From the NCBI RefSeq assembly GCF_000142905.1, contig NW_013657665.1, positions 436,039-500,038 of the forward strand: a DNA stretch of 64,000 nt. Direction: 5' to 3'. A model generated the notes under the pieces. It did not search any database. It was not told the DNA's origin and was given only the letters and a program-made list of their open reading frames with translations. This DNA comes from Thecamonas trahens ATCC 50062. Lineage: Eukaryota; Protista; Apusomonadida. This document shows, piece after piece, positions 54,417 through 62,446 of the stretch. The position numbers were made by a program, and so were the translations under genes. The first letter of the stretch is position 1. Each line of letters starts with the position of its first letter.

Positions 54417-55445
54417 GGTTGCCGGGTCAGGTGTGTGTGAGAGCGAGAGAGAGAGAGAGAGAGCGTGTGTGTGTGTGTGCAGAAAGGTGGTGTGTGGCAG
54501 ACTGGAGAAGGTTCAGAGGCCAAGTATAGCCGTGTAGGCGGGTGGTGTAGTCTGTGGCTGCCTCTCGCTGTCTCTCTGCCGCAGCTGCAGTGGGCAGCGT
54601 GAGTCGGGTTGGTGACGGCGTGGCATGACACAGTTCGGCCGACAAAAAGGCGCCAAAGTTGGCCATGCTTCGGACGTCGCGTCGGCGTGCTGCAACGGGC
54701 GGCCAAGCCTGCTCGGAAGCTGAAAGAAGAGATGTTGGACAGTTTGATGAGATGTATGCGCTCCTTACATTGCAGAAAACGCAAGGCGGTAAGTCTCGAG
54801 GGGATGTCAGTGGCCCTCACCGCATGTATATGCTCCTCGTCGTGCTGCGGCGCGTCGTGCCGTAAACGGGATTGCTTTGTCCACGCCGTGGAGAACAAGC
54901 TTCGCGCCGCCTGCTGCTGCGGCACCAAGAGAGGGGAAGAATTTGCAACACAAGATGCCAACCGACGGTGGGCGACCAAGGTGACGTACAGTGGCATACA
55001 CCTCTCGGAGAATGTAAGTTGAAGAGAAGGGGAGGAGGTACTTGAGCAGAAGAGTGAATGCACAGAGCGGAAGATGCATTCTTATGCACACGGCCTGTCC
55101 TGACAGACTTGATGCGCTCCAGGGACGGGGGTAGGGGAGCTTTCGTGTGACACGTGGGTTTGTCGACGGAGGCATGGAAGGAAGCTTTTTTTTTGGCCTC
55201 CGAGCCTTCCTCCTCCCGGCATTCCTCCTTGCTAGGACCACCCCATTTCAAGCACATAGCGTCGCTTGACGTGTGATAGTCCTCGGTTGGAGCAGGGCTT
55301 TCAGCTGAGACGTGAGCTTCTGTGGTAGGCCGAGGGTGTGACTTTGAGGGAGGTCACTTTTGGGTGGGTCACTTCCGGGCTGCCAGCAAGCTGTTTTTTT
55401 TTGCGTTGTCGAACAAACACCCCCCCCCCCATACACAGACACACA

Positions 55446-55447
<2 letters not shown>

Positions 55448-55514
<67 letters not shown>
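55448..55514 (+). repeat. (TC)n microsatellite ending in CACAG just before the ATG (possible 5'UTR intron acceptor)
   Basis: Seen directly. Confidence 0.9.
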
Positions 55515-55517
<3 letters not shown>

Positions 55518-55520
55518 GCC

Positions 55521-57434
55521 ATGCGGTTGCTTAGGTCGTCGTCATACACGTTTGCATCTGGGACTGTGTCGTCATCGGCGGCGTCGTCTTCGTCTGCCGA
55601 GGGCAAGTCTGCGCCGGACGGACTCGTCCTCGACCGGGATGCGCTCTCGCCTGAGCTGCAGGTGATTCTGGACAAGGTGGATCGCGATGGTGATGGTGAT
55701 GTGGACGTCAACGAGCTGCTTATGGCGTTCCAGGAGCTGCATCACACCAAGCAGTCGAACAAGCGTCTCGTGCGCATTCTCGCCATCGGTGCGGTGCTGT
55801 TCACGCTCACACTCGGAGTCATTTTCGCGCTCTCTGTGGCGGCGGCCGAGCTGGCCAAGGACACCAGCGTCAACTCTTCGGGCAACTCGCCGTCGGTGAT
55901 GCGGACCAAGTCTGGCGGTGGCGAGTACGCGTCGACGGTGCGGACGGCAAGCGTGACGCCGGCCGTCTCGGTCGGCGATGGTGAGGATCCGCCGGATCAC
56001 ACCGCAAGCGCACGTGCTCTGCGCGCGCGGTCGGCCGAGGGCATTGCTATCCGAGCCGCCGGCGGATTGGACAAGGCCGATCTCGACAACATGTGCGAGG
56101 CGGCCGAGACCGACACGTCGGACGAGTACTCGTACGACACTAGCCTCATCTTCGCGCGGGTTGACGCTGTGACGCAGATGCGGAACAACCCGACGGCGCC
56201 GTTTGCGCTTTCTCTTCCGTCGGCCGCCGGCGACGCCATCGTCGAGTTCAAGGTTGTCGGCATGGCGACGTTTGCCAACATCACCGTGCCCGGCGTTGAC
56301 GCCCAGGTCGAGCTCGAGGTCACCGACCTCGGACTCAAGTCGGATCCGGATGCTGTTGCCCGCCTCTGCTGCGACGCTGTCAACTGCGCGTACGCCATCG
56401 GCTCGCCGCAGGACAGCCTCATCAACGAGAACTTTGTCAACGGCACTGCAGTCGCCGAGCCGACGCCTGAGGACACCGAAACGACCTCGTCCCGGTTCAT
56501 CCTCAACCGCTTTGCCTCGTACGTCCCCATCGGCACTGAGCACGAGGCTCTCGCGGACCGCGACCTTTCGACCCGCGCCGCGCTCTCGGCTTCGCTCCTC
56601 GCGTTCCTGCGCGACGAGTGCGAGGGCTCGCAGTGCCATGTCCAGGGCCGCATGGAGGCCAACAACGTGCTCGACGACACCGGCGCATTTGTGACGGCCA
56701 AGAAGTTCTCGGCGATCGCCACTGGCACGACGATGGAGATTCCCGAGGGCACCCAGCTCGTCTGCCCGCACACCGACGTGGTTGACCAGGCTGGCACCGC
56801 CCTTGGGCGGCTCAACGATGGCCTTGCCACCAAGCTCCGCGACTCGATCAAGCGGTTTGCGAGCGTGTACCGGACCGCTGGCAACACGGCAAAGGCCGAC
56901 GAGTACGATGCGCTTGCCGATACGGTCCACGGCTACATGGAGACTGCACTGACGAGCTCGAAGATTGTGTGCGAGGGCGCCAACACGGTCATCGCCGGCA
57001 AGACCTTTACCGGCATGGACCTCATGATCTTTGGCGAGACCGAGGACGAGACCGCTGTCTTTACGCCTGCGACGTACGGCGACACGACGCCGATCACGTT
57101 CTGCACCTGTGCCCTGGTTGATGGTGAGGATGACGGTGAGCCCGAAGAGGAGGACGATGGGACGACGGCGCGCGGGCTTGTGGAGACCCGCCGGAGCCGG
57201 TTCCGCCGTCGCCGTCGCTTCCGCCGCCGCCGCCGTCGCCTCCGCCGCAAGCGCCGCCGTCGCCGTCGCACTCGTCGCACCCGCCGCCGCCGTCGCCGTC
57301 GCCGCCTCCGCCCCCGCCGCAGGTACCGTCGCAGGTACCGTCGCTTCCGTCGCCGCATCCGTCGCCGCTCGCCGCCGCCTCCCCCACGCAAGCCGCGCAA
57401 GCCGTCGCCGTCGTCGTCATGCTGCTGCAAGTAA
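55521..57434 (+). CDS. EF-hand, single-TM (type II) protein with Cys-containing ectodomain and protamine-like Arg-rich C-terminus
   Basis: DRDGDGDVDVNE loop, TM ILAIGAVLFTLTLGVIFALSV, N-glycosylation sequons, tail RRSRFRRRRRF...SSSCCCK. Confidence 0.8.
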   Translation: MRLLRSSSYTFASGTVSSSAASSSSAEGKSAPDGLVLDRDALSPELQVILDKVDRDGDGDVDVNELLMAFQELHHTKQSNKRLVRILAIGAVLFTLTLGVIFALSVAAAELAKDTSVNSSGNSPSVMRTKSGGGEYASTVRTASVTPAVSVGDGEDPPDHTASARALRARSAEGIAIRAAGGLDKADLDNMCEAAETDTSDEYSYDTSLIFARVDAVTQMRNNPTAPFALSLPSAAGDAIVEFKVVGMATFANITVPGVDAQVELEVTDLGLKSDPDAVARLCCDAVNCAYAIGSPQDSLINENFVNGTAVAEPTPEDTETTSSRFILNRFASYVPIGTEHEALADRDLSTRAALSASLLAFLRDECEGSQCHVQGRMEANNVLDDTGAFVTAKKFSAIATGTTMEIPEGTQLVCPHTDVVDQAGTALGRLNDGLATKLRDSIKRFASVYRTAGNTAKADEYDALADTVHGYMETALTSSKIVCEGANTVIAGKTFTGMDLMIFGETEDETAVFTPATYGDTTPITFCTCALVDGEDDGEPEEEDDGTTARGLVETRRSRFRRRRRFRRRRRRLRRKRRRRRRTRRTRRRRRRRRLRPRRRYRRRYRRFRRRIRRRSPPPPPRKPRKPSPSSSCCCK

Positions 57435-57738
57435 CTGTCGTCACTACGACCCCAGCCACAACGCAATGTAGCCTGCCCCGGACCCACCAACTGTGTGGGC
57501 ACTGGGCGGGATGCATTGGTTTCACTTTATCTTCCCTCCCTGCTTGCGCATGTAAACATTTTGAGCAGAGTACATCACCGTTGCAAGAAATCGCCGACCC
57601 AACCCCCAGCCTCCGTACCCCGACCCACCTCACACCCCACCCACCAACCCCGCACACACACACACACACACACACTCCCCCCGCACATTCACACGCACCA
57701 ACCCCTCCCCTCCCCCCCCCTCCCCTCCCGCACGCATC

Positions 57739-60456
57739 ATGGACACCGAGACGTACTGCGCCCGGTGCGGGCTCGAGTTTGGGCTAGAGGAGCTGCTGGC
57801 GACACACGTCGAGCAGCGTGGACACTCGGCAAGTATCTCGCCCGCCGAGGAGGCGTACACCGTCCGCCCGGCCTCGGTCACCTGCCTCGTGTGCTCGATC
57901 ACCATCCCCGCTGCTGAACATGCCGCCCATGTTCGCGGCGTCAACCACATTGCCCGCCTTCCGCTCCGCGAGTCGTCGCCGGGTCTCGACTCGGACGGCT
58001 CGCTGCTCTCGTCGCCGTCGGCGTCGTTCTCTGCCTCGCCCTCGCCCTCGCCCTCGCCACGTCGCCCGCAACATGCTCACTCAGCGTCGCCTTCTGTCTC
58101 GCCCTCGCCCTCGCCCTCGCCGGTCCGCCGCGTCTCGTTTGCCGAGACCACGCTCGACCTCACCGCCGACCACACCCCGCAGCCGTCGCCGCTCGCCACC
58201 GCCACCTTTTGCGGCATCTGCCGCATGGAGTTTGGCCTGCCCGAGCTGCTCGAGGCTCACAACGCTGCCGGTGAGCACTCGGATGAGGTCATGGTCCGAG
58301 AGGCCGCCGCCAACCACGACGGCCGCCAGACCGCACTCTGCCTCGTCTGTGACCAGGTTGTCGAGTCGTCGCGCCTCCTCGCCCACCGGCTCTCTGTTGG
58401 CCACCGCGACGGCCTCGCGCGCCTGCAGGACGAGCACGTCATCGATATTTCTTTCCACGAATCAGAGGACGACCCGTCGCTCCTCCTCGAGTCAGACGAC
58501 GACGATGGCGACGATGACGGCGATGGCGACAGCGCCACCGCCCATGCTGCTGCCCATGCTGCTGCCGCCGCCGCTGCCACTTCACTCGACGACTCGCTCG
58601 AGGAGCAGCGTCGCCAGCGCGAGGCCCTTCAGGCAATTCTGGCGCAGACGGCCGAGGCTGAGGCTACAGCCAAGGCGCAGCGCAAGGCTGAGGCCGAAGC
58701 CGAGGCCGAGGCCCAGCGTAAGGCAAAGGCCGAGGCCGAAGCCGAGGCCGAGGCCCAGCGTAAGGCAAAGGCCGAGGCCGAAGCCCAGCGCAGAGCCGAG
58801 GCTGCGGCCAAGCGCGAGGCTGACCGCAAGCGCCAGGCCGAGGCCGCTGCCAAGCGCCAGGCCGAGGCTGCGGCCAAGCGCGAGGCCGATGCCGCCAAGC
58901 GCCAGGCTGAAGCCGCCGCCAAGCGCGAGGCTGACCGCAAGCGTCAGGCCGAGGCCGCTGCCAAGCGCCAGGCCGAAGCTGACAAGGCCGAAGAAGAGGT
59001 CGAGGTTATCGCGCCCGATGCTCCCGACGCGTCCAACTCCTCCAACGCTCTGGACACTCCCGGCACTCCTGGTGCCTCTGCCACGGACACCAACACGTCC
59101 ATGGCCGAGCCAGCAGACGACGAGTCGGAGGCCAACACTTCGGCCATGTCTGCGGCGGCGTCTTACCACTCGCCAGCTCGGGCCAGCCCCTCCCGGTCGC
59201 GGAACATGACCCCGGTCATGCCGACCGAGACGCTCGCTGGACCGCCAGTCTATGAGTCGCCACTGATGCGAGCACGCGCCAAGCGCGAGGCTGCCAAGCG
59301 TGCGCGCAACTCGATGTCCGCCATTGCGGCCGCTGGCGGCAGCACGGCGCCGAGCCCGGCTACCAAGGCTGCGCGCGCCGAGACTGAGGCTGTGCGTGCG
59401 GTGATCGAGGCGGCGCGAAAGGCGGCGGCAGCGGCGCGCGAGGCCGGGTATGAGCCGCCCAAGGGTGAGCATGCCACCATTGTGGCGCTTGGCGAGAGCG
59501 AGACTGGCCGCAATAGCGGCATTGTCCTCAACTCGGCCGCACGCGGCGTGCTCAACGCTGTCCGCGTCAACAAGCCGGGTGTGACCAAGCGTGCGGCCGA
59601 GCTCTGCAAGCGCCGCTCCATCAAGACGGCGGCCCAGCTCGGGTGGCTGACCCGCGCCGTCACGCTTTGCGAGCTCACTACTCTCGCGGGCGACGACACC
59701 GATGAGCGGGTGCGCCGGCTGGCGGCCAAGGCGGCGTCGCCAGTCCGCTGCGACCTCCTCGCCGCGGTTGGCCTCGACGCCTCAAACGTCACCGCTGCCG
59801 CCGTCTGCGTCTACGTCAACCGCGTGCCGCAAGTGCTCAGGTCCGCGGGCCAGGCTGGCGTTGCCGTCGCCGCCGCCGCCGGTGGCTTCCCGGCTGCGCT
59901 CACAGACATGGACTCGCGGCTCGGCGAGGTGGCCGCCGCAGTCGCTCACGGCGCCACCGAGATCGACGTCGTCGTCGCCCGCGCCCACATCATCGCCCAC
60001 GCCTGGGACGCGCTCTATGAGGAGCTGCGCACTTTTGTGGCGGCGGCCGGGCCGGACGTCCGAGTCAAGGCTGTCCTCGCCATCCATCAGCTTCCCACGC
60101 TCCGTGACGTGTACAAGGCCACGCTCGTGGCTGCGTTTGCCGGCGTCGACATGGTGTGCTCGACCCCAACTGCCACCGCCACGCCCATGCCTGTCGGACT
60201 CACCATGCTCCGCGCCCTTCGCGAGTACCACGAGATTTCCGGCTTTACTGTAGGCCTCAAGATCGGTGGCGGCATCGCCGCACCCAAGGCCGCCCTCCAG
60301 TGGATGGCCATGGTCGTCGAGGAGATGGGCTTTGCCTGGCTCGCCGCCAACTTCCGCATCGGCGCCACGCCCGGTCTGCTTGTTGATATCGAGCGCCAGA
60401 TCGAGCACGGCGTGACCCGCAACTACGCCGCCTCGCACTACATGGCGCTGCCGTAA
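57739..60456 (+). CDS. Four C2H2 (matrin/U1-like) zinc fingers + charged coiled coil + DERA-like domain lacking the Schiff-base Lys
   Basis: Cx2Cx11-12Hx5H x4; LTTLAGDDT, AAVCVY, GGFPA, GATEIDVV, VYKA, GLKIGGG, FRIGA..LL.DIERQ; DFIKTSTG is replaced by DMVCSTPT. Confidence 0.88.
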   Translation: MDTETYCARCGLEFGLEELLATHVEQRGHSASISPAEEAYTVRPASVTCLVCSITIPAAEHAAHVRGVNHIARLPLRESSPGLDSDGSLLSSPSASFSASPSPSPSPRRPQHAHSASPSVSPSPSPSPVRRVSFAETTLDLTADHTPQPSPLATATFCGICRMEFGLPELLEAHNAAGEHSDEVMVREAAANHDGRQTALCLVCDQVVESSRLLAHRLSVGHRDGLARLQDEHVIDISFHESEDDPSLLLESDDDDGDDDGDGDSATAHAAAHAAAAAAATSLDDSLEEQRRQREALQAILAQTAEAEATAKAQRKAEAEAEAEAQRKAKAEAEAEAEAQRKAKAEAEAQRRAEAAAKREADRKRQAEAAAKRQAEAAAKREADAAKRQAEAAAKREADRKRQAEAAAKRQAEADKAEEEVEVIAPDAPDASNSSNALDTPGTPGASATDTNTSMAEPADDESEANTSAMSAAASYHSPARASPSRSRNMTPVMPTETLAGPPVYESPLMRARAKREAAKRARNSMSAIAAAGGSTAPSPATKAARAETEAVRAVIEAARKAAAAAREAGYEPPKGEHATIVALGESETGRNSGIVLNSAARGVLNAVRVNKPGVTKRAAELCKRRSIKTAAQLGWLTRAVTLCELTTLAGDDTDERVRRLAAKAASPVRCDLLAAVGLDASNVTAAAVCVYVNRVPQVLRSAGQAGVAVAAAAGGFPAALTDMDSRLGEVAAAVAHGATEIDVVVARAHIIAHAWDALYEELRTFVAAAGPDVRVKAVLAIHQLPTLRDVYKATLVAAFAGVDMVCSTPTATATPMPVGLTMLRALREYHEISGFTVGLKIGGGIAAPKAALQWMAMVVEEMGFAWLAANFRIGATPGLLVDIERQIEHGVTRNYAASHYMALP
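58655..58990 (+). repeat. Coding tandem repeats (AEAEAQRKAK / QAEAAAKR / EADRKR)
   Basis: Visible in the DNA and the translation. Confidence 0.85.
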
Positions 60457-60476: not shown

Positions 60477-61409
60477 TCAGCCCGCTGCGTTGTGCTTGGC
60501 CTTAAACTCCATCGGCGAGACGTACGCCGCACCCAGCCGCCACATGCCGCGCTTGCGCTTGCGCGCAGTGTCGCGCGCAGACTCCAACGCCTCCAGCTGG
60601 CCGTCGTGCTCGGCCCCGCCCGAGGTGTAGACGTCGGCAAAGCCGGCGTCGACGAGTGCCATCGACACATCGCTCCACCACGCAAACGGGAAGAGCGCCG
60701 GGAGCGGAACCGGGCTCGCCCTGCTCAGCCGGTCCACCTTGACCGACGCCACGGCACGGCCGTACTGGTCGCGCTTCAGTAGCTTGACCTTGACCGCCTT
60801 GCCCAACGCATACGCCTCCAGCCATGCCCGCGCCTCCTCGGCGTACGGCTGGCCTGGTCGGCCAAAGTGTGGCGCCTCGGGCGCATCGATGCCGGCCAGG
60901 CGGATGTGGACGGTAGTCGCCCCGAGCTTGCGCGTCAGATCAGGCGTCCAGCCCGAGGTCAGCCACCGAAGCAGCGGCGGCTGGTGGTAAATCCGCAGGT
61001 TGTCGCCGTCAGCCACACCCACAACCCGCCCGCGGATGACCCGGTTCCGTGAAAACGCCCGCTCCGGCAGCGATCCGGCCGTCGGATAGCGCCGGACGAG
61101 CCGGGTGGCAAGGACCGCCAAGCCTGCAGCCGCCAGCGCCAGCACAGCCGCCGCTCCCGCATCTAACATAACGCTCCCGCCTTCGACGGTACCCGCCTGT
61201 GCGGCCAGAGCGTCGGCACTCTGCACCACCGGCCGTGGCAGCCTGGCCAGGCCGTACGCCGTCGAGCGCGCCAAGTCGCGGAGCCAAGTTGGGAGTGGCG
61301 CGTCGCGGGTGACAGCCACAGCATGCGCCGCACGCGCCGCCTTGCGGATCCCTTCTGCACAGGCGTGGGTTGTAGCCAGAAAGAGCGTCGGAGATGGCGC
61401 CTGTGCCAT
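60477..61409 (-). CDS. LCL3: Staphylococcal-nuclease-family endonuclease, LCL3-like, with TM anchor
   Basis: RRYPTA, GRVVGVADGDNLRIYH, IRLAGIDAPEAPHFGRPGQPY, DQYGRAVA, ARKRKRGMW, SPMEFK. Confidence 0.88.
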   Translation of the reverse strand: MAQAPSPTLFLATTHACAEGIRKAARAAHAVAVTRDAPLPTWLRDLARSTAYGLARLPRPVVQSADALAAQAGTVEGGSVMLDAGAAAVLALAAAGLAVLATRLVRRYPTAGSLPERAFSRNRVIRGRVVGVADGDNLRIYHQPPLLRWLTSGWTPDLTRKLGATTVHIRLAGIDAPEAPHFGRPGQPYAEEARAWLEAYALGKAVKVKLLKRDQYGRAVASVKVDRLSRASPVPLPALFPFAWWSDVSMALVDAGFADVYTSGGAEHDGQLEALESARDTARKRKRGMWRLGAAYVSPMEFKAKHNAAG

Positions 61410-61833
61410 CCCCCTATCCTCCCGTGCAAAGTTGAAGCCCGGTCGGTGTCCGGGAGAAGTGGGCGAGAGTGGGCGAGTTCCCCAACCGAAGGCCGAGTTC
61501 CACAACCACACAAAGATCTCCTGGGAACGGAGGGGGGGGGATGGTGGTTGGGTGTATTTGTTTGTGAGAAGGGGAAGACCTGGAAGGGAGGGGGTAGAGG
61601 TTGGAGGGGGGGGGAGGGGGGGGGGGGGGATGACTTGAGGATCGATGTCGAAGGTGTCTGGGTAGTGGTGGTGGCGCGGTAGTGGACGCGAGGGGGCAGC
61701 GGCGGAACAGCGGCGCGACAACAGTGACAAAGTCAGGAGCAGACGACAACGGGCGGCAACAGACGAGGCCGCCGCCGCAGATCATGCTCGGACATGGCAT
61801 GAAGGGCGAGAGGCTGTCGAGAGGCGGAGATGA

Positions 61834-62446
61834 CTAGCCAAAGACCGCGCGGTGCTTGAGGGTGTGGCCGACCACCTTGCTGTACAGCTCGAGGTTGAAG
61901 CTGTCGCCAAACGGAATGACCTTGGCCTCGCGGATGGAGAGCTCGGGCGAGACATGCCCGATGACCTCCACAAACTTGGTCGAGTACAGCATCGGCTGAA
62001 ATGGAGGGGATGGGGGTGAGTGAATGGTTGTGTGCCCTCGGCCGGTCGTCAATGCTCTACTCTCGGCCCTAAAAAGGTCGTGGAATGCAGGAATCTACGT
62101 CGCCACTATCCGCCACCTTGCCCCCTGCCCAAGCGCCGCCGACCACCTGTCAGAAGTGGTGGGAGAGGTAGGCGCAAGGTAGAAGGGAGGGGGGTACATG
62201 CTCTGGCGGTAGGGGGGGGGGGGGGGGGGGGGGAGGGAGGGGGGGGGGAGGAAACGGGGCACATACGTCCTGCGACTGGACGGTCACCGTATGGCCGTCA
62301 CACGTCCGAAGCGAAACAGCACCCGTCTTGTCGACAACCTCGCCGACAACACGGACAAGCGAGCCCACAAAGGCCGAGAGCGAAGCGCCGTTGATCCGCG
62401 GAGTTGCAACGCCTGTTGGTGCAGCAGCAGTCGTCGTGGTCGCCAT
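61834..62446 (-). CDS. RPA3: Replication protein A 14-kDa subunit; exons 62267-62446 and 61834-61995
   Basis: TPRINGASLSAFVGSLVRVVGEV...DGHTVTV|...STKFVEVIG...FGDSFNLELYSKVV; intron GTATGT..TTTCAG in phase 0. Confidence 0.92.

What the first reader, a model, noticed from the sequence alone, without database searches (positions are those of the whole stretch)
57739..60456. Zinc-finger-DERA fusion in which the aldolase Schiff-base lysine is replaced by Cys
Seen: two pairs of Cx2Cx11-12Hx5H fingers, an acidic patch, a charged coiled coil, then a full eukaryotic-type DERA barrel in which DFIKTSTGK reads DMVCSTPTA (Cys codon 60157-60159) while flanking motifs are kept. Known: that Lys forms the DERA Schiff base; fingers with Hx5H spacing (matrin/JAZ type) often bind RNA; human DERA has been reported in stress granules. 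Inference: a pseudoenzyme acting as a deoxyribose-phosphate or nucleotide-status sensor, or as a scaffold tied to nucleic acid.
Basis: partly seen in the sequence, partly recalled or inferred. Interest (0 to 1): 0.8.

Follow-up and report, generated by a model that had tools for sequence, protein, structure and literature searches.

The report
Zinc-finger protein with dead DERA aldolase
A gene of the free-living flagellate Thecamonas trahens joins four zinc fingers and a long charged helix to a copy of the sugar-phosphate aldolase DERA that has lost its catalytic lysine; it is a species-restricted dead-enzyme paralogue, of modest interest, that databases name as an active enzyme.

Summary
Window 57739-60456 (+) is one 905-codon ORF of Thecamonas trahens. 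It encodes four Cx2Cx11-12Hx5H fingers in two duplicated pairs, an acidic patch, a repeat-encoded Ala/Glu/Lys/Arg helix and a complete long-type DERA barrel (aa ~589-905; AF2 pLDDT 94.9).

The Schiff-base lysine (E. coli K167) is Cys807. Every other homologue inspected that covers the site (roughly 230) has Lys.
- the phosphate-binding G171-K172 pair is deleted;
- S238-S239 reads T-P with an inserted Gly;
- D16 is Glu.
C47, D102, K137 and K201 are kept.

An intact canonical DERA lies on another contig (52% identical) and is the sister of the fused copy in the tree. The fused copy has changed about three times faster. No orthologous fusion turned up in two protein libraries or a JGI metagenome scan, and the finger region has no detectable relatives.

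Best reading: a lineage-specific dead DERA paralogue tethered to C2H2-type fingers and acting as an adaptor or binding module. A deoxyribose-phosphate sensor is unlikely because the phosphate site is remodelled. Expression, the fusion at RNA level and any function are untested.

The public model (858 aa, named an aldolase) removes a 100-nt "intron" that encodes conserved barrel sequence. The scan noted this same stretch before (s1-749578, s1-760760).

The parts
57739..60456 (+). Whole 905-codon ORF (stop included): zinc fingers, linker, helix, DERA-like barrel
   Evidence: Codon-usage log-likelihood favours this frame in every 40-codon window. GC3 is 0.70-0.90 in all segments. Identical to public protein P0001 over aa 1-854.
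57757..57948 (+). Finger pair 1: Cx2Cx12Hx5H (aa 7-29) and Cx2Cx11Hx5H (aa 49-70)
   Evidence: regex and shuffles. Weak Pfam hits zf-C2H2_2 E 0.005 and zf_UBZ E 0.005, both under cut-off.
58210..58404 (+). Finger pair 2: Cx2Cx12Hx5H (aa 158-180) and Cx2Cx11Hx5H (aa 201-222), a duplicate of pair 1
   Evidence: 36% identity, E 5e-10.
58459..58533 (+). Acidic patch (Asp/Glu/Gly-rich, aa ~241-265)
   Evidence: read directly from the translation.
58594..58998 (+). Ala/Glu/Lys/Arg/Gln-rich helical repeat (aa ~286-420), encoded by tandem-repeat DNA
   Evidence: TRF periods 42, 66 and 87 over 58669-58976, with a 42-bp unit 98% identical. No L/I/V/M/F in aa 303-419.
59503..60453 (+). Complete long-type DERA/DeoC barrel including its N-terminal extension (aa ~589-905)
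   Evidence: AF2 pLDDT 94.9, pTM 0.92. Foldseek TM 0.87-0.90 (target-normalised) to 5c6m and 1jcl.
60157..60159 (+). TGC codon = Cys807 in place of the Schiff-base Lys (E. coli K167)
   Evidence: TGC differs from AAA or AAG at all three bases, and the following loop also lacks two residues.
60259..60261 (+). Lys841 = E. coli K201, kept
   Evidence: invariant column.
60300..60399 (+). 100-nt GT..AG interval that the public gene model removes as an intron; it encodes conserved DERA sequence (the helix before the last strand and the R-I-G-A motif)
   Evidence: The tail aligns to DERA as far as the natural stop. GC3 is 0.90 and the coding LLR is positive.

Best explanation
This is one Thecamonas trahens gene whose product joins, from N to C: two duplicated pairs of C2H2-type zinc fingers, a disordered Ser/Pro linker, an acidic patch, a ~135-residue charged helix that probably serves as a stiff spacer, a second disordered linker, and a full DERA TIM barrel. 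The barrel comes from a lineage-specific duplication of the organism's own DERA gene. It can no longer act as a class I aldolase because the Schiff-base lysine is Cys and the adjoining phosphate-binding loop is shortened and rewritten. The canonical copy elsewhere in the genome supplies the enzyme activity. The fused copy most likely works as a non-catalytic adaptor: the fingers bind a nucleic acid or protein target, and the preserved barrel serves as an interaction or ligand-binding module. One candidate partner is the active DERA paralogue, since DERAs dimerise. Shown here: the architecture, the loss of the lysine and of phosphate contacts, the presence of an intact paralogue, the sister relationship and faster evolution, and one continuous coding frame. 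Inferred only: catalytic inactivity, zinc binding, what the fingers bind, what the barrel binds, and that the gene is expressed as one protein.
For: The ORF and its continuous coding signal. The public protein shares aa 1-854, so the public annotation also fuses fingers and barrel. DERA homology and fold. Lys to Cys at a column where every other homologue covering the site has Lys: roughly 230 sequences; 66 of 67; the one exception looks misaligned. Active-site map: with residue roles from PMC8403123. Intact paralogue with the Lys motif at G000:C12:132806-133708. Tree: the fused domain is sister to the canonical copy (SH-aLRT 87) inside a 99%-supported clade, with branch 1.64 against 0.44. Relative rate: 62 against 20 lineage-specific changes, p 4e-6. 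Outside the active-site loops, changes avoid the most conserved columns: 4/38 against 41/122, Fisher p 0.0066, post-hoc partition. The fingers are not chance and are duplicated.
Against: There is no transcript or protein evidence; exact-sequence look-ups found no other contigs. No orthologue was found anywhere, so current purifying selection cannot be measured. Across all columns, changes on the fused branch are not significantly depleted at conserved sites (26% against 36-38%, p 0.23), which also fits a domain drifting toward decay. The finger subtype is unresolved: all Pfam hits are under cut-off and the single-sequence model was useless (pLDDT 36). Long open frames arise easily in this 70% GC sequence; a 463-aa ORF lies in another frame over the same DNA.
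Confidence: 0.55

Rival explanations
1. A decaying relic. The duplicated DERA landed downstream of, or became fused to, a finger and low-complexity gene. The barrel, or the whole gene, is now drifting neutrally, and the frame stays open only because stop codons are rare in 70% GC sequence.
For: The branch is about 3x faster. There is no overall depletion of changes at conserved columns (p 0.23). No orthologue was found. The helix is a recently expanded tandem repeat. Long alternative-frame ORFs lie over the same DNA.
Against: There is no frameshift or stop in 905 codons, and the frame-specific codon-usage signal is positive in every window. The barrel is predicted at pLDDT 94.9. Outside the active-site loops, the most conserved columns are spared. 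C47, D102, K137 and K201 are kept. The C-terminal tail is conserved up to the same natural stop as in the paralogue.
Confidence: 0.2
2. Two genes read as one. A finger and helix protein and a separate DERA-like protein, starting at an internal Met around aa 489-526, happen to share a frame without an intervening stop.
For: About 170 residues of low-complexity linker separate the helix from the barrel, with no domain hit. Several in-frame Met codons precede the barrel. Open frames are cheap at this GC content.
Against: There is no in-frame stop between the two parts. The coding log-likelihood stays positive in frame 0 through aa 441-600. The public annotation also joins them.
Confidence: 0.12
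3. Still an enzyme, with altered chemistry. Cys807, or the retained Lys841 (E. coli K201), takes over as nucleophile, so the barrel catalyses a different reaction on an unphosphorylated aldehyde.
For: Five invariant pocket residues are retained (T647, C690, D743, K777, K841). In E. coli DERA, C47 lies close enough to K167 to be cross-linked to it by crotonaldehyde (PMC8403123), so Cys807 would face Cys690 and Lys841.
Against: Class I aldolase chemistry needs an amine for the enamine, and a thiol cannot provide one. At the observed rate of change, retention of five residues is not significant (0.66^5 is about 0.12). The substrate phosphate site is disrupted. TIGR00126 scores far below its equivalog cut-off.
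Confidence: 0.07

Closest known systems
Canonical deoxyribose-phosphate aldolase (DERA/DeoC, EC 4.1.2.4), long ~320-aa form found in eukaryotes and many bacteria; the nearest is the T. trahens paralogue at G000:C12:132806-133708
   Same: The same TIM-barrel fold and N-terminal extension. 52% identity to the paralogue and 43-50% to other long DERAs. D102, K201, C47, K137 and T18 equivalents are kept.
   Different: Schiff-base Lys is Cys. G171-K172 are deleted. S238-S239 read T-P plus an inserted Gly. D16 is Glu and R207 is Ala. About 588 extra N-terminal residues carry the fingers and helix. The branch is about 3x longer.
Dead-enzyme paralogues (pseudoenzymes) that keep the fold of an active sister enzyme
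   Same: Loss of the key catalytic residue with the fold preserved, an active paralogue in the same genome, and accelerated evolution after duplication.
   Different: No partner, ligand or phenotype is known. It is restricted to one sequenced species. A full-text search for 'deoxyribose phosphate aldolase' with 'pseudoenzyme' found no paper.
Toxoplasma gondii DERA-like protein TgDPA (PDB 3qyq)
   Same: A second DERA-fold protein in a protist beside the housekeeping enzyme. It appears among the fold matches (rank 50, TM 0.69-0.76, 20% identity).
   Different: It is a distant relative with no fingers or helix. Its reported non-enzymatic roles are recalled from memory (Ueno 2010; Tonkin 2015, the latter seen only as a citation) and could not be read here.
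C2H2 zinc fingers with Hx5H spacing (U1-like, matrin, JAZ and zf-C2H2_2/Rei1-type)
   Same: Cx2Cx12Hx5H spacing. Fingers 1 and 3 also carry the classical Phe and Leu core positions. Language-model look-alikes are all C2H2 clusters (score 0.90 or less, leads only).
   Different: No Pfam model reaches its cut-off; the best are zf-C2H2_2 at 17.6 bits against 26.9 and zf_UBZ at 16.9 against 25.6. Fingers 2 and 4 have x11 spacing and weak cores. No sequence relatives were found.
Other natural DERA fusions seen in the representative library (DERA-aldehyde dehydrogenase P0128; PIP5K-DERA P0200)
   Same: A DERA barrel joined to another domain in one polypeptide.
   Different: Those keep the catalytic Lys, and their partners are enzymes, not zinc fingers.

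Membership tests
DERA/DeoC class I aldolase (PF01791; TIGR00126 equivalog) | Significant sequence match to the family models | tested here: inconclusive
   PF01791 scores 25.1 bits, just over its 23.8 cut-off. TIGR00126 scores 66.3 bits, well under its 117.3 equivalog cut-off. phmmer to E. coli DeoC chains gives E 4.5e-19. Homology is clear; equivalog status is not met.
DERA/DeoC class I aldolase (PF01791; TIGR00126 equivalog) | (beta/alpha)8 barrel of the DERA type | tested here: met
   AF2 pLDDT 94.9, pTM 0.92. Foldseek top hits are all DERA, with target-normalised TM 0.85-0.90 and rmsd 2.1-2.7 A.
DERA/DeoC class I aldolase (PF01791; TIGR00126 equivalog) | Schiff-base lysine (E. coli K167) | tested here: not met
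   Cys807, codon TGC at 60157-60159. All other inspected homologues covering the site have Lys.
DERA/DeoC class I aldolase (PF01791; TIGR00126 equivalog) | Proton-relay residues (E. coli D102, K201) | tested here: met
   D743 and K841 are kept.
DERA/DeoC class I aldolase (PF01791; TIGR00126 equivalog) | Phosphate-binding residues (E. coli G171, K172, G205, V206, G236, S238, S239; PMC8403123) | tested here: not met
   G171-K172 are deleted, S238 is Thr, and S239 is Pro with an inserted Gly. G205, V206 (as Ile) and G236 are kept (roles).
DERA/DeoC class I aldolase (PF01791; TIGR00126 equivalog) | Aldolase activity on deoxyribose 5-phosphate | not testable with these tools
   Needs an enzyme assay.
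Pseudoenzyme (dead paralogue of an active enzyme) | Catalytic residue lost while the fold is kept, with an active paralogue in the same genome | tested here: met
Pseudoenzyme (dead paralogue of an active enzyme) | Retained under selection or expressed, that is, functional and not a pseudogene | tested here: inconclusive
   In favour: an intact frame with coding signal and conserved core columns spared once the active-site loops are set aside. Against or missing: no overall depletion, no orthologues and no transcripts.
Classical C2H2 zinc finger | Cx2-4Cx12Hx3-5H with conserved hydrophobic core, and a match to family models | tested here: inconclusive
   The motif and core are present in fingers 1 and 3; fingers 2 and 4 are degenerate with x11 spacing. 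Pfam hits are all below cut-off. The single-sequence model shows hairpin plus helix at fingers 1 and 3, but at pLDDT 36.
dsRNA-binding JAZ / matrin / U1-type fingers (PF12171, PF12874, PF06220) | Match to the family models | tested here: not met
   None of these models appeared at E up to 10. Only the Hx5H spacing agrees. zf-C2H2_jaz and zf-met appear only among language-model look-alikes at 0.89.

The most novel reading that the evidence does not exclude
The barrel is not merely dead but repurposed as a thiol-based sensor. Cys807 sits in the retained pocket facing the invariant Cys690 and Lys841. It could react reversibly with an aldehyde (acetaldehyde, or open-chain deoxyribose derivatives) or form a disulfide. 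That would couple nucleoside-catabolism or aldehyde/redox stress to whatever nucleic acid or protein the zinc fingers hold.
Probability: 0.05. Interest if true: 0.7.

Novelty: new variant of a known kind. Interest (0 to 1): 0.3.

Why it matters
If the gene is expressed and functional, it would be a clean natural case of the DERA barrel recruited for a non-catalytic role and wired to zinc fingers. It would add a family to the catalogue of pseudoenzymes, in a lineage (apusomonads) that sits close to animals and fungi. In practice, it corrects a database name: the protein is called deoxyribose-phosphate aldolase but lacks the Schiff-base lysine, and the public gene model cuts off conserved barrel sequence. 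Its weight is limited because it is known from one species only and nothing shows that it is expressed.

Tried and rejected
1. Orthologous fusions. A search of the barrel within full-length-sized proteins (498-1584 aa) found only the protein itself. A domain-alone search gave nothing closer than 50%. The 1.84-billion representative library held no close relative. A JGI metagenome scan with specific peptide patterns returned only canonical DERAs at 43-47%.

2. Finger-region relatives. There were no hits at E up to 0.1. In PDB sequences only E>1 noise to BCL11A fingers appeared.

3. A weak own-genome hit (E 0.022) lay 1.4 kb upstream of the canonical DERA and briefly suggested that the paralogue also carries a finger. 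Translation showed a poly-Asp, low-complexity match with a stop and no Cys/His motif, so it was rejected.

4. The structure of the finger region from a single sequence came out at pLDDT 36 and was unusable, so no fold search was run on it.

5. Transcript evidence by exact-protein look-up found nothing on record for either the 905-aa or the 858-aa product.

6. The Tonkin 2015 paper on the Toxoplasma DERA-like protein is not held.

7. Rfam and tRNA scans of the window were empty.

8. dN/dS was not attempted: the paralogues are about 50% identical, so synonymous sites are saturated, and there are no orthologues.
Full report
**What is there.** The window comes from Thecamonas trahens ATCC 50062. 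The only database protein matching the region is named 'deoxyribose-phosphate aldolase [Thecamonas trahens ATCC 50062]' (P0001), and the window maps to G000:C15:436039-500038. At 57739-60456 (+) there is a single 905-codon ORF. P0001 (858 aa) is identical to it over aa 1-854 and then ends in four unrelated residues.

I located the public model's last intron. It has a GT donor at 60300 and an AG acceptor ending at 60399, so it is 100 nt long, shifts the frame and runs into a stop. The removed interval and the rest of the ORF encode sequence that aligns with the end of DERA, down to the same natural stop as in the paralogue. That stretch has GC3 of 0.90 and a positive coding score. The unspliced 905-aa reading is therefore the one homology supports.

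**Is it one coding frame?** I trained a codon-usage log-likelihood on ten long ORFs of the window. It favours frame 0 over the two shifted frames in every 40-codon window along the whole ORF. It is weakest in the Ser-Pro repeat at aa 81-120 and clearly positive through the second linker at aa 441-600. GC3 exceeds GC2 in all eight segments. This matters because open frames are cheap at 70% GC: a 463-aa ORF overlaps in another frame.

**N-terminal half.** Four matches to C..C.{11,12}H.{5}H lie at aa 7, 49, 158 and 201.
- In 20,000 shuffles of aa 1-244 there was never more than one match, and only 31 shuffles had one.
- In six frames of the 64-kb window there is only one other match, in a Pro/Arg-rich frame that does not look like a finger.
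- All eight Cys of this region sit in the motifs.
- Pair 2 is a duplicate of pair 1 (36% identity, E 5e-10).
- Fingers 1 and 3 have the classical C2H2 Phe and Leu core positions. Fingers 2 and 4 have x11 spacing and weak cores.

No Pfam model reaches its cut-off; the best are zf-C2H2_2 at 17.6 bits and zf_UBZ at 16.9 bits. The JAZ, zf-met and U1 models do not appear at all. No protein relatives were found, nor any PDB relatives, and the single-sequence model failed (pLDDT 36). Language-model look-alikes are generic C2H2 clusters at 0.90 or less, which are leads only. I therefore call these C2H2-type fingers of unresolved subtype. An RNA-binding role rests on spacing alone.

The 'coiled coil' (aa ~286-420) has no L/I/V/M/F between aa 303 and 419. 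It is encoded by tandem repeats with periods of 42, 66 and 87 nt, including a 42-nt unit at 98% identity. A single charged (ER/K-like) helix that grew by recent repeat expansion is at least as likely as a coiled coil. That is my inference from composition.

**The barrel.** Residues ~589-905 form a complete long-type DERA.
- E. coli DeoC chains match at E 4.5e-19.
- PF01791 scores just over its cut-off.
- TIGR00126 scores far below its equivalog cut-off.
- With a 69-sequence alignment (A1), AlphaFold gives pLDDT 94.9 and pTM 0.92.
- Foldseek returns only DERA structures at the top, with target-normalised TM 0.85-0.90.

**Active-site map.** I mapped the site through the printed E. coli alignment and alignment A1. 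Residue roles come from the DERA review PMC8403123.

| E. coli residue | Role | In the fused protein |
|---|---|---|
| K167 | Schiff base | Cys807 |
| G171, K172 | phosphate contacts | deleted (loop two residues shorter; most other positions from 808 to 818 also changed) |
| S238 | phosphate contact | Thr877 |
| S239 | phosphate contact | Pro878, followed by an inserted Gly879 |
| D16 | invariant column in A1 | Glu645 |
| R207 | Arg/Lys in most homologues | Ala847 |
| T18 | invariant column in A1 | kept (T647) |
| C47 | not essential for catalysis; its adducts inactivate the enzyme | kept (C690) |
| D102 | proton relay | kept (D743) |
| K137 | invariant column in A1 | kept (K777) |
| K201 | proton relay | kept (K841) |
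| G204, G205 | phosphate site | kept |

Among the homologues collected that cover the site (roughly 230), every one has Lys at the K167 column. The codon is TGC. It differs from either Lys codon at all three bases and the neighbouring loop carries a 6-nt deletion, so this is not a base-calling slip.

**Origin.** The same genome holds a second DERA at G000:C12:132806-133708 (+). It is 52% identical and has the Lys motif, the K201 motif and the G-A-S-S loop intact. Its 5' end abuts an assembly gap.

In a maximum-likelihood tree of 82 sequences, the fused domain is sister to this canonical copy (SH-aLRT 87). Both lie inside a 7-row clade with 99% support that includes a EukProt transcript. The terminal branches are 1.64 and 0.44. 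Using the five nearest outgroups, I counted 62 changes unique to the fused copy against 20 unique to the canonical copy (binomial p 4e-6). This is a lineage-specific duplicate that then evolved about three times faster.

**Is the barrel still under selection?** This is the weak point. I took the 175 columns where the ancestral state can be inferred. Across them the fused copy changed at 26% of the most conserved columns against 36-38% of the rest, which is not significant (p 0.23).

When the K167 loop and the phosphate-loop positions are set aside, the figures become 4/38 against 41/122 (Fisher p 0.0066). That partition was partly chosen after I had seen the data, so I treat it as suggestive only. 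The pattern fits 'fold kept, active site released', but a relic in early decay is not excluded.

**Distribution.** No orthologous fusion or close relative of the fused barrel turned up:
- among 498-1584-aa proteins;
- among 175-556-aa proteins, where the best hit was 50% identical;
- among 1.84 billion cluster representatives;
- in JGI metagenome contigs, where the patterns specific to this protein found nothing and only canonical DERAs at 43-47% came back.

Other natural DERA fusions exist (with aldehyde dehydrogenase, P0128; with a PIP5K fragment, P0200), but they keep the Lys.

**How it most likely works.** The canonical paralogue provides aldolase activity. The fused protein cannot form the enamine that class I aldolase chemistry requires (established DERA mechanism; Heine 2001, as summarised in PMC8403123).

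The layout is finger array, flexible linker, long stiff helix, flexible linker, globular barrel. That is the layout of a tethered adaptor. The fingers would anchor it to a nucleic acid or a protein, and the barrel would serve as an interaction or ligand module. One candidate partner is the active DERA, because DERAs dimerise (PMC8403123). All of this is inference; nothing here shows expression.

My rough odds:
- dead as a DERA: 0.85;
- translated as one polypeptide: 0.8;
- functional and not decaying: 0.6.

**Known or new.** The protein is already in public databases under an enzyme name. A full-text search for 'deoxyribose phosphate aldolase' together with 'pseudoenzyme' found no paper. The paper on human DERA in the stress response (Salleron 2014) exists as a citation but says nothing about this protein.

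I class the finding as a new variant of a known kind: a dead-enzyme paralogue, here of DERA, fused to zinc fingers. Interest is modest because it rests on one genome and has no expression data. Earlier notes of this scan on the same stretch reached the same basic reading (s1-749578). They also pointed out the neighbouring SNase and RPA3 genes (s1-760760), which I confirmed by Pfam. I give that adjacency no functional weight in a eukaryote.

Noticed in passing
window 60300-60399: The public gene model (P0001) removes this 100-nt GT..AG interval. That shifts the frame and truncates the conserved end of the barrel. Homology and codon usage favour the unspliced reading, so this is probably a mis-annotation, or at most a non-productive isoform.
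   Followed up: yes
G000:C12:132806-133708 (L004 1507-2409): The canonical T. trahens DERA has intact catalytic motifs. Its 5' end runs into an assembly gap (a run of N), so its start codon and first ~25 residues are not visible.
   Followed up: partly
window 60477-61730 (-): A convergent neighbour encodes a staphylococcal-nuclease (SNase) domain protein (PF00565, E 1.6e-21). Only 20 nt separate its stop codon from that of the DERA-like gene, so their 3' UTRs must overlap.
   Followed up: partly
window 61834-62052 (-), with a probable upstream exon near 62150-62400: RPA3 (Rep_fac-A_3, E 2.1e-7), apparently split by an intron.
   Followed up: no
window 55338-57434 (+): The upstream gene has a weak EF-hand match. 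Its tail has an acidic stretch followed by about 60 residues that are almost pure Arg, and it ends in Cys-Cys-Cys-Lys.
   Followed up: no
window 58669-58976: The charged helix is encoded by nested tandem repeats (periods 42, 66 and 87 nt, all multiples of three). One 42-nt unit is 98% identical between copies, which points to recent in-frame expansion.
   Followed up: partly
P0128 and P0200 (representative library): Other natural DERA fusions exist: DERA joined to a full aldehyde dehydrogenase (1142 aa), a plausible two-step deoxyribose-phosphate-to-acetate enzyme, and a PIP5K fragment joined to DERA (496 aa). Both keep the catalytic Lys.
   Followed up: partly
window ~57600-57700: A (CA)n-type microsatellite lies just upstream of the start codon. 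It reads as a Thr-His repeat in the open frame before the ATG.
   Followed up: no
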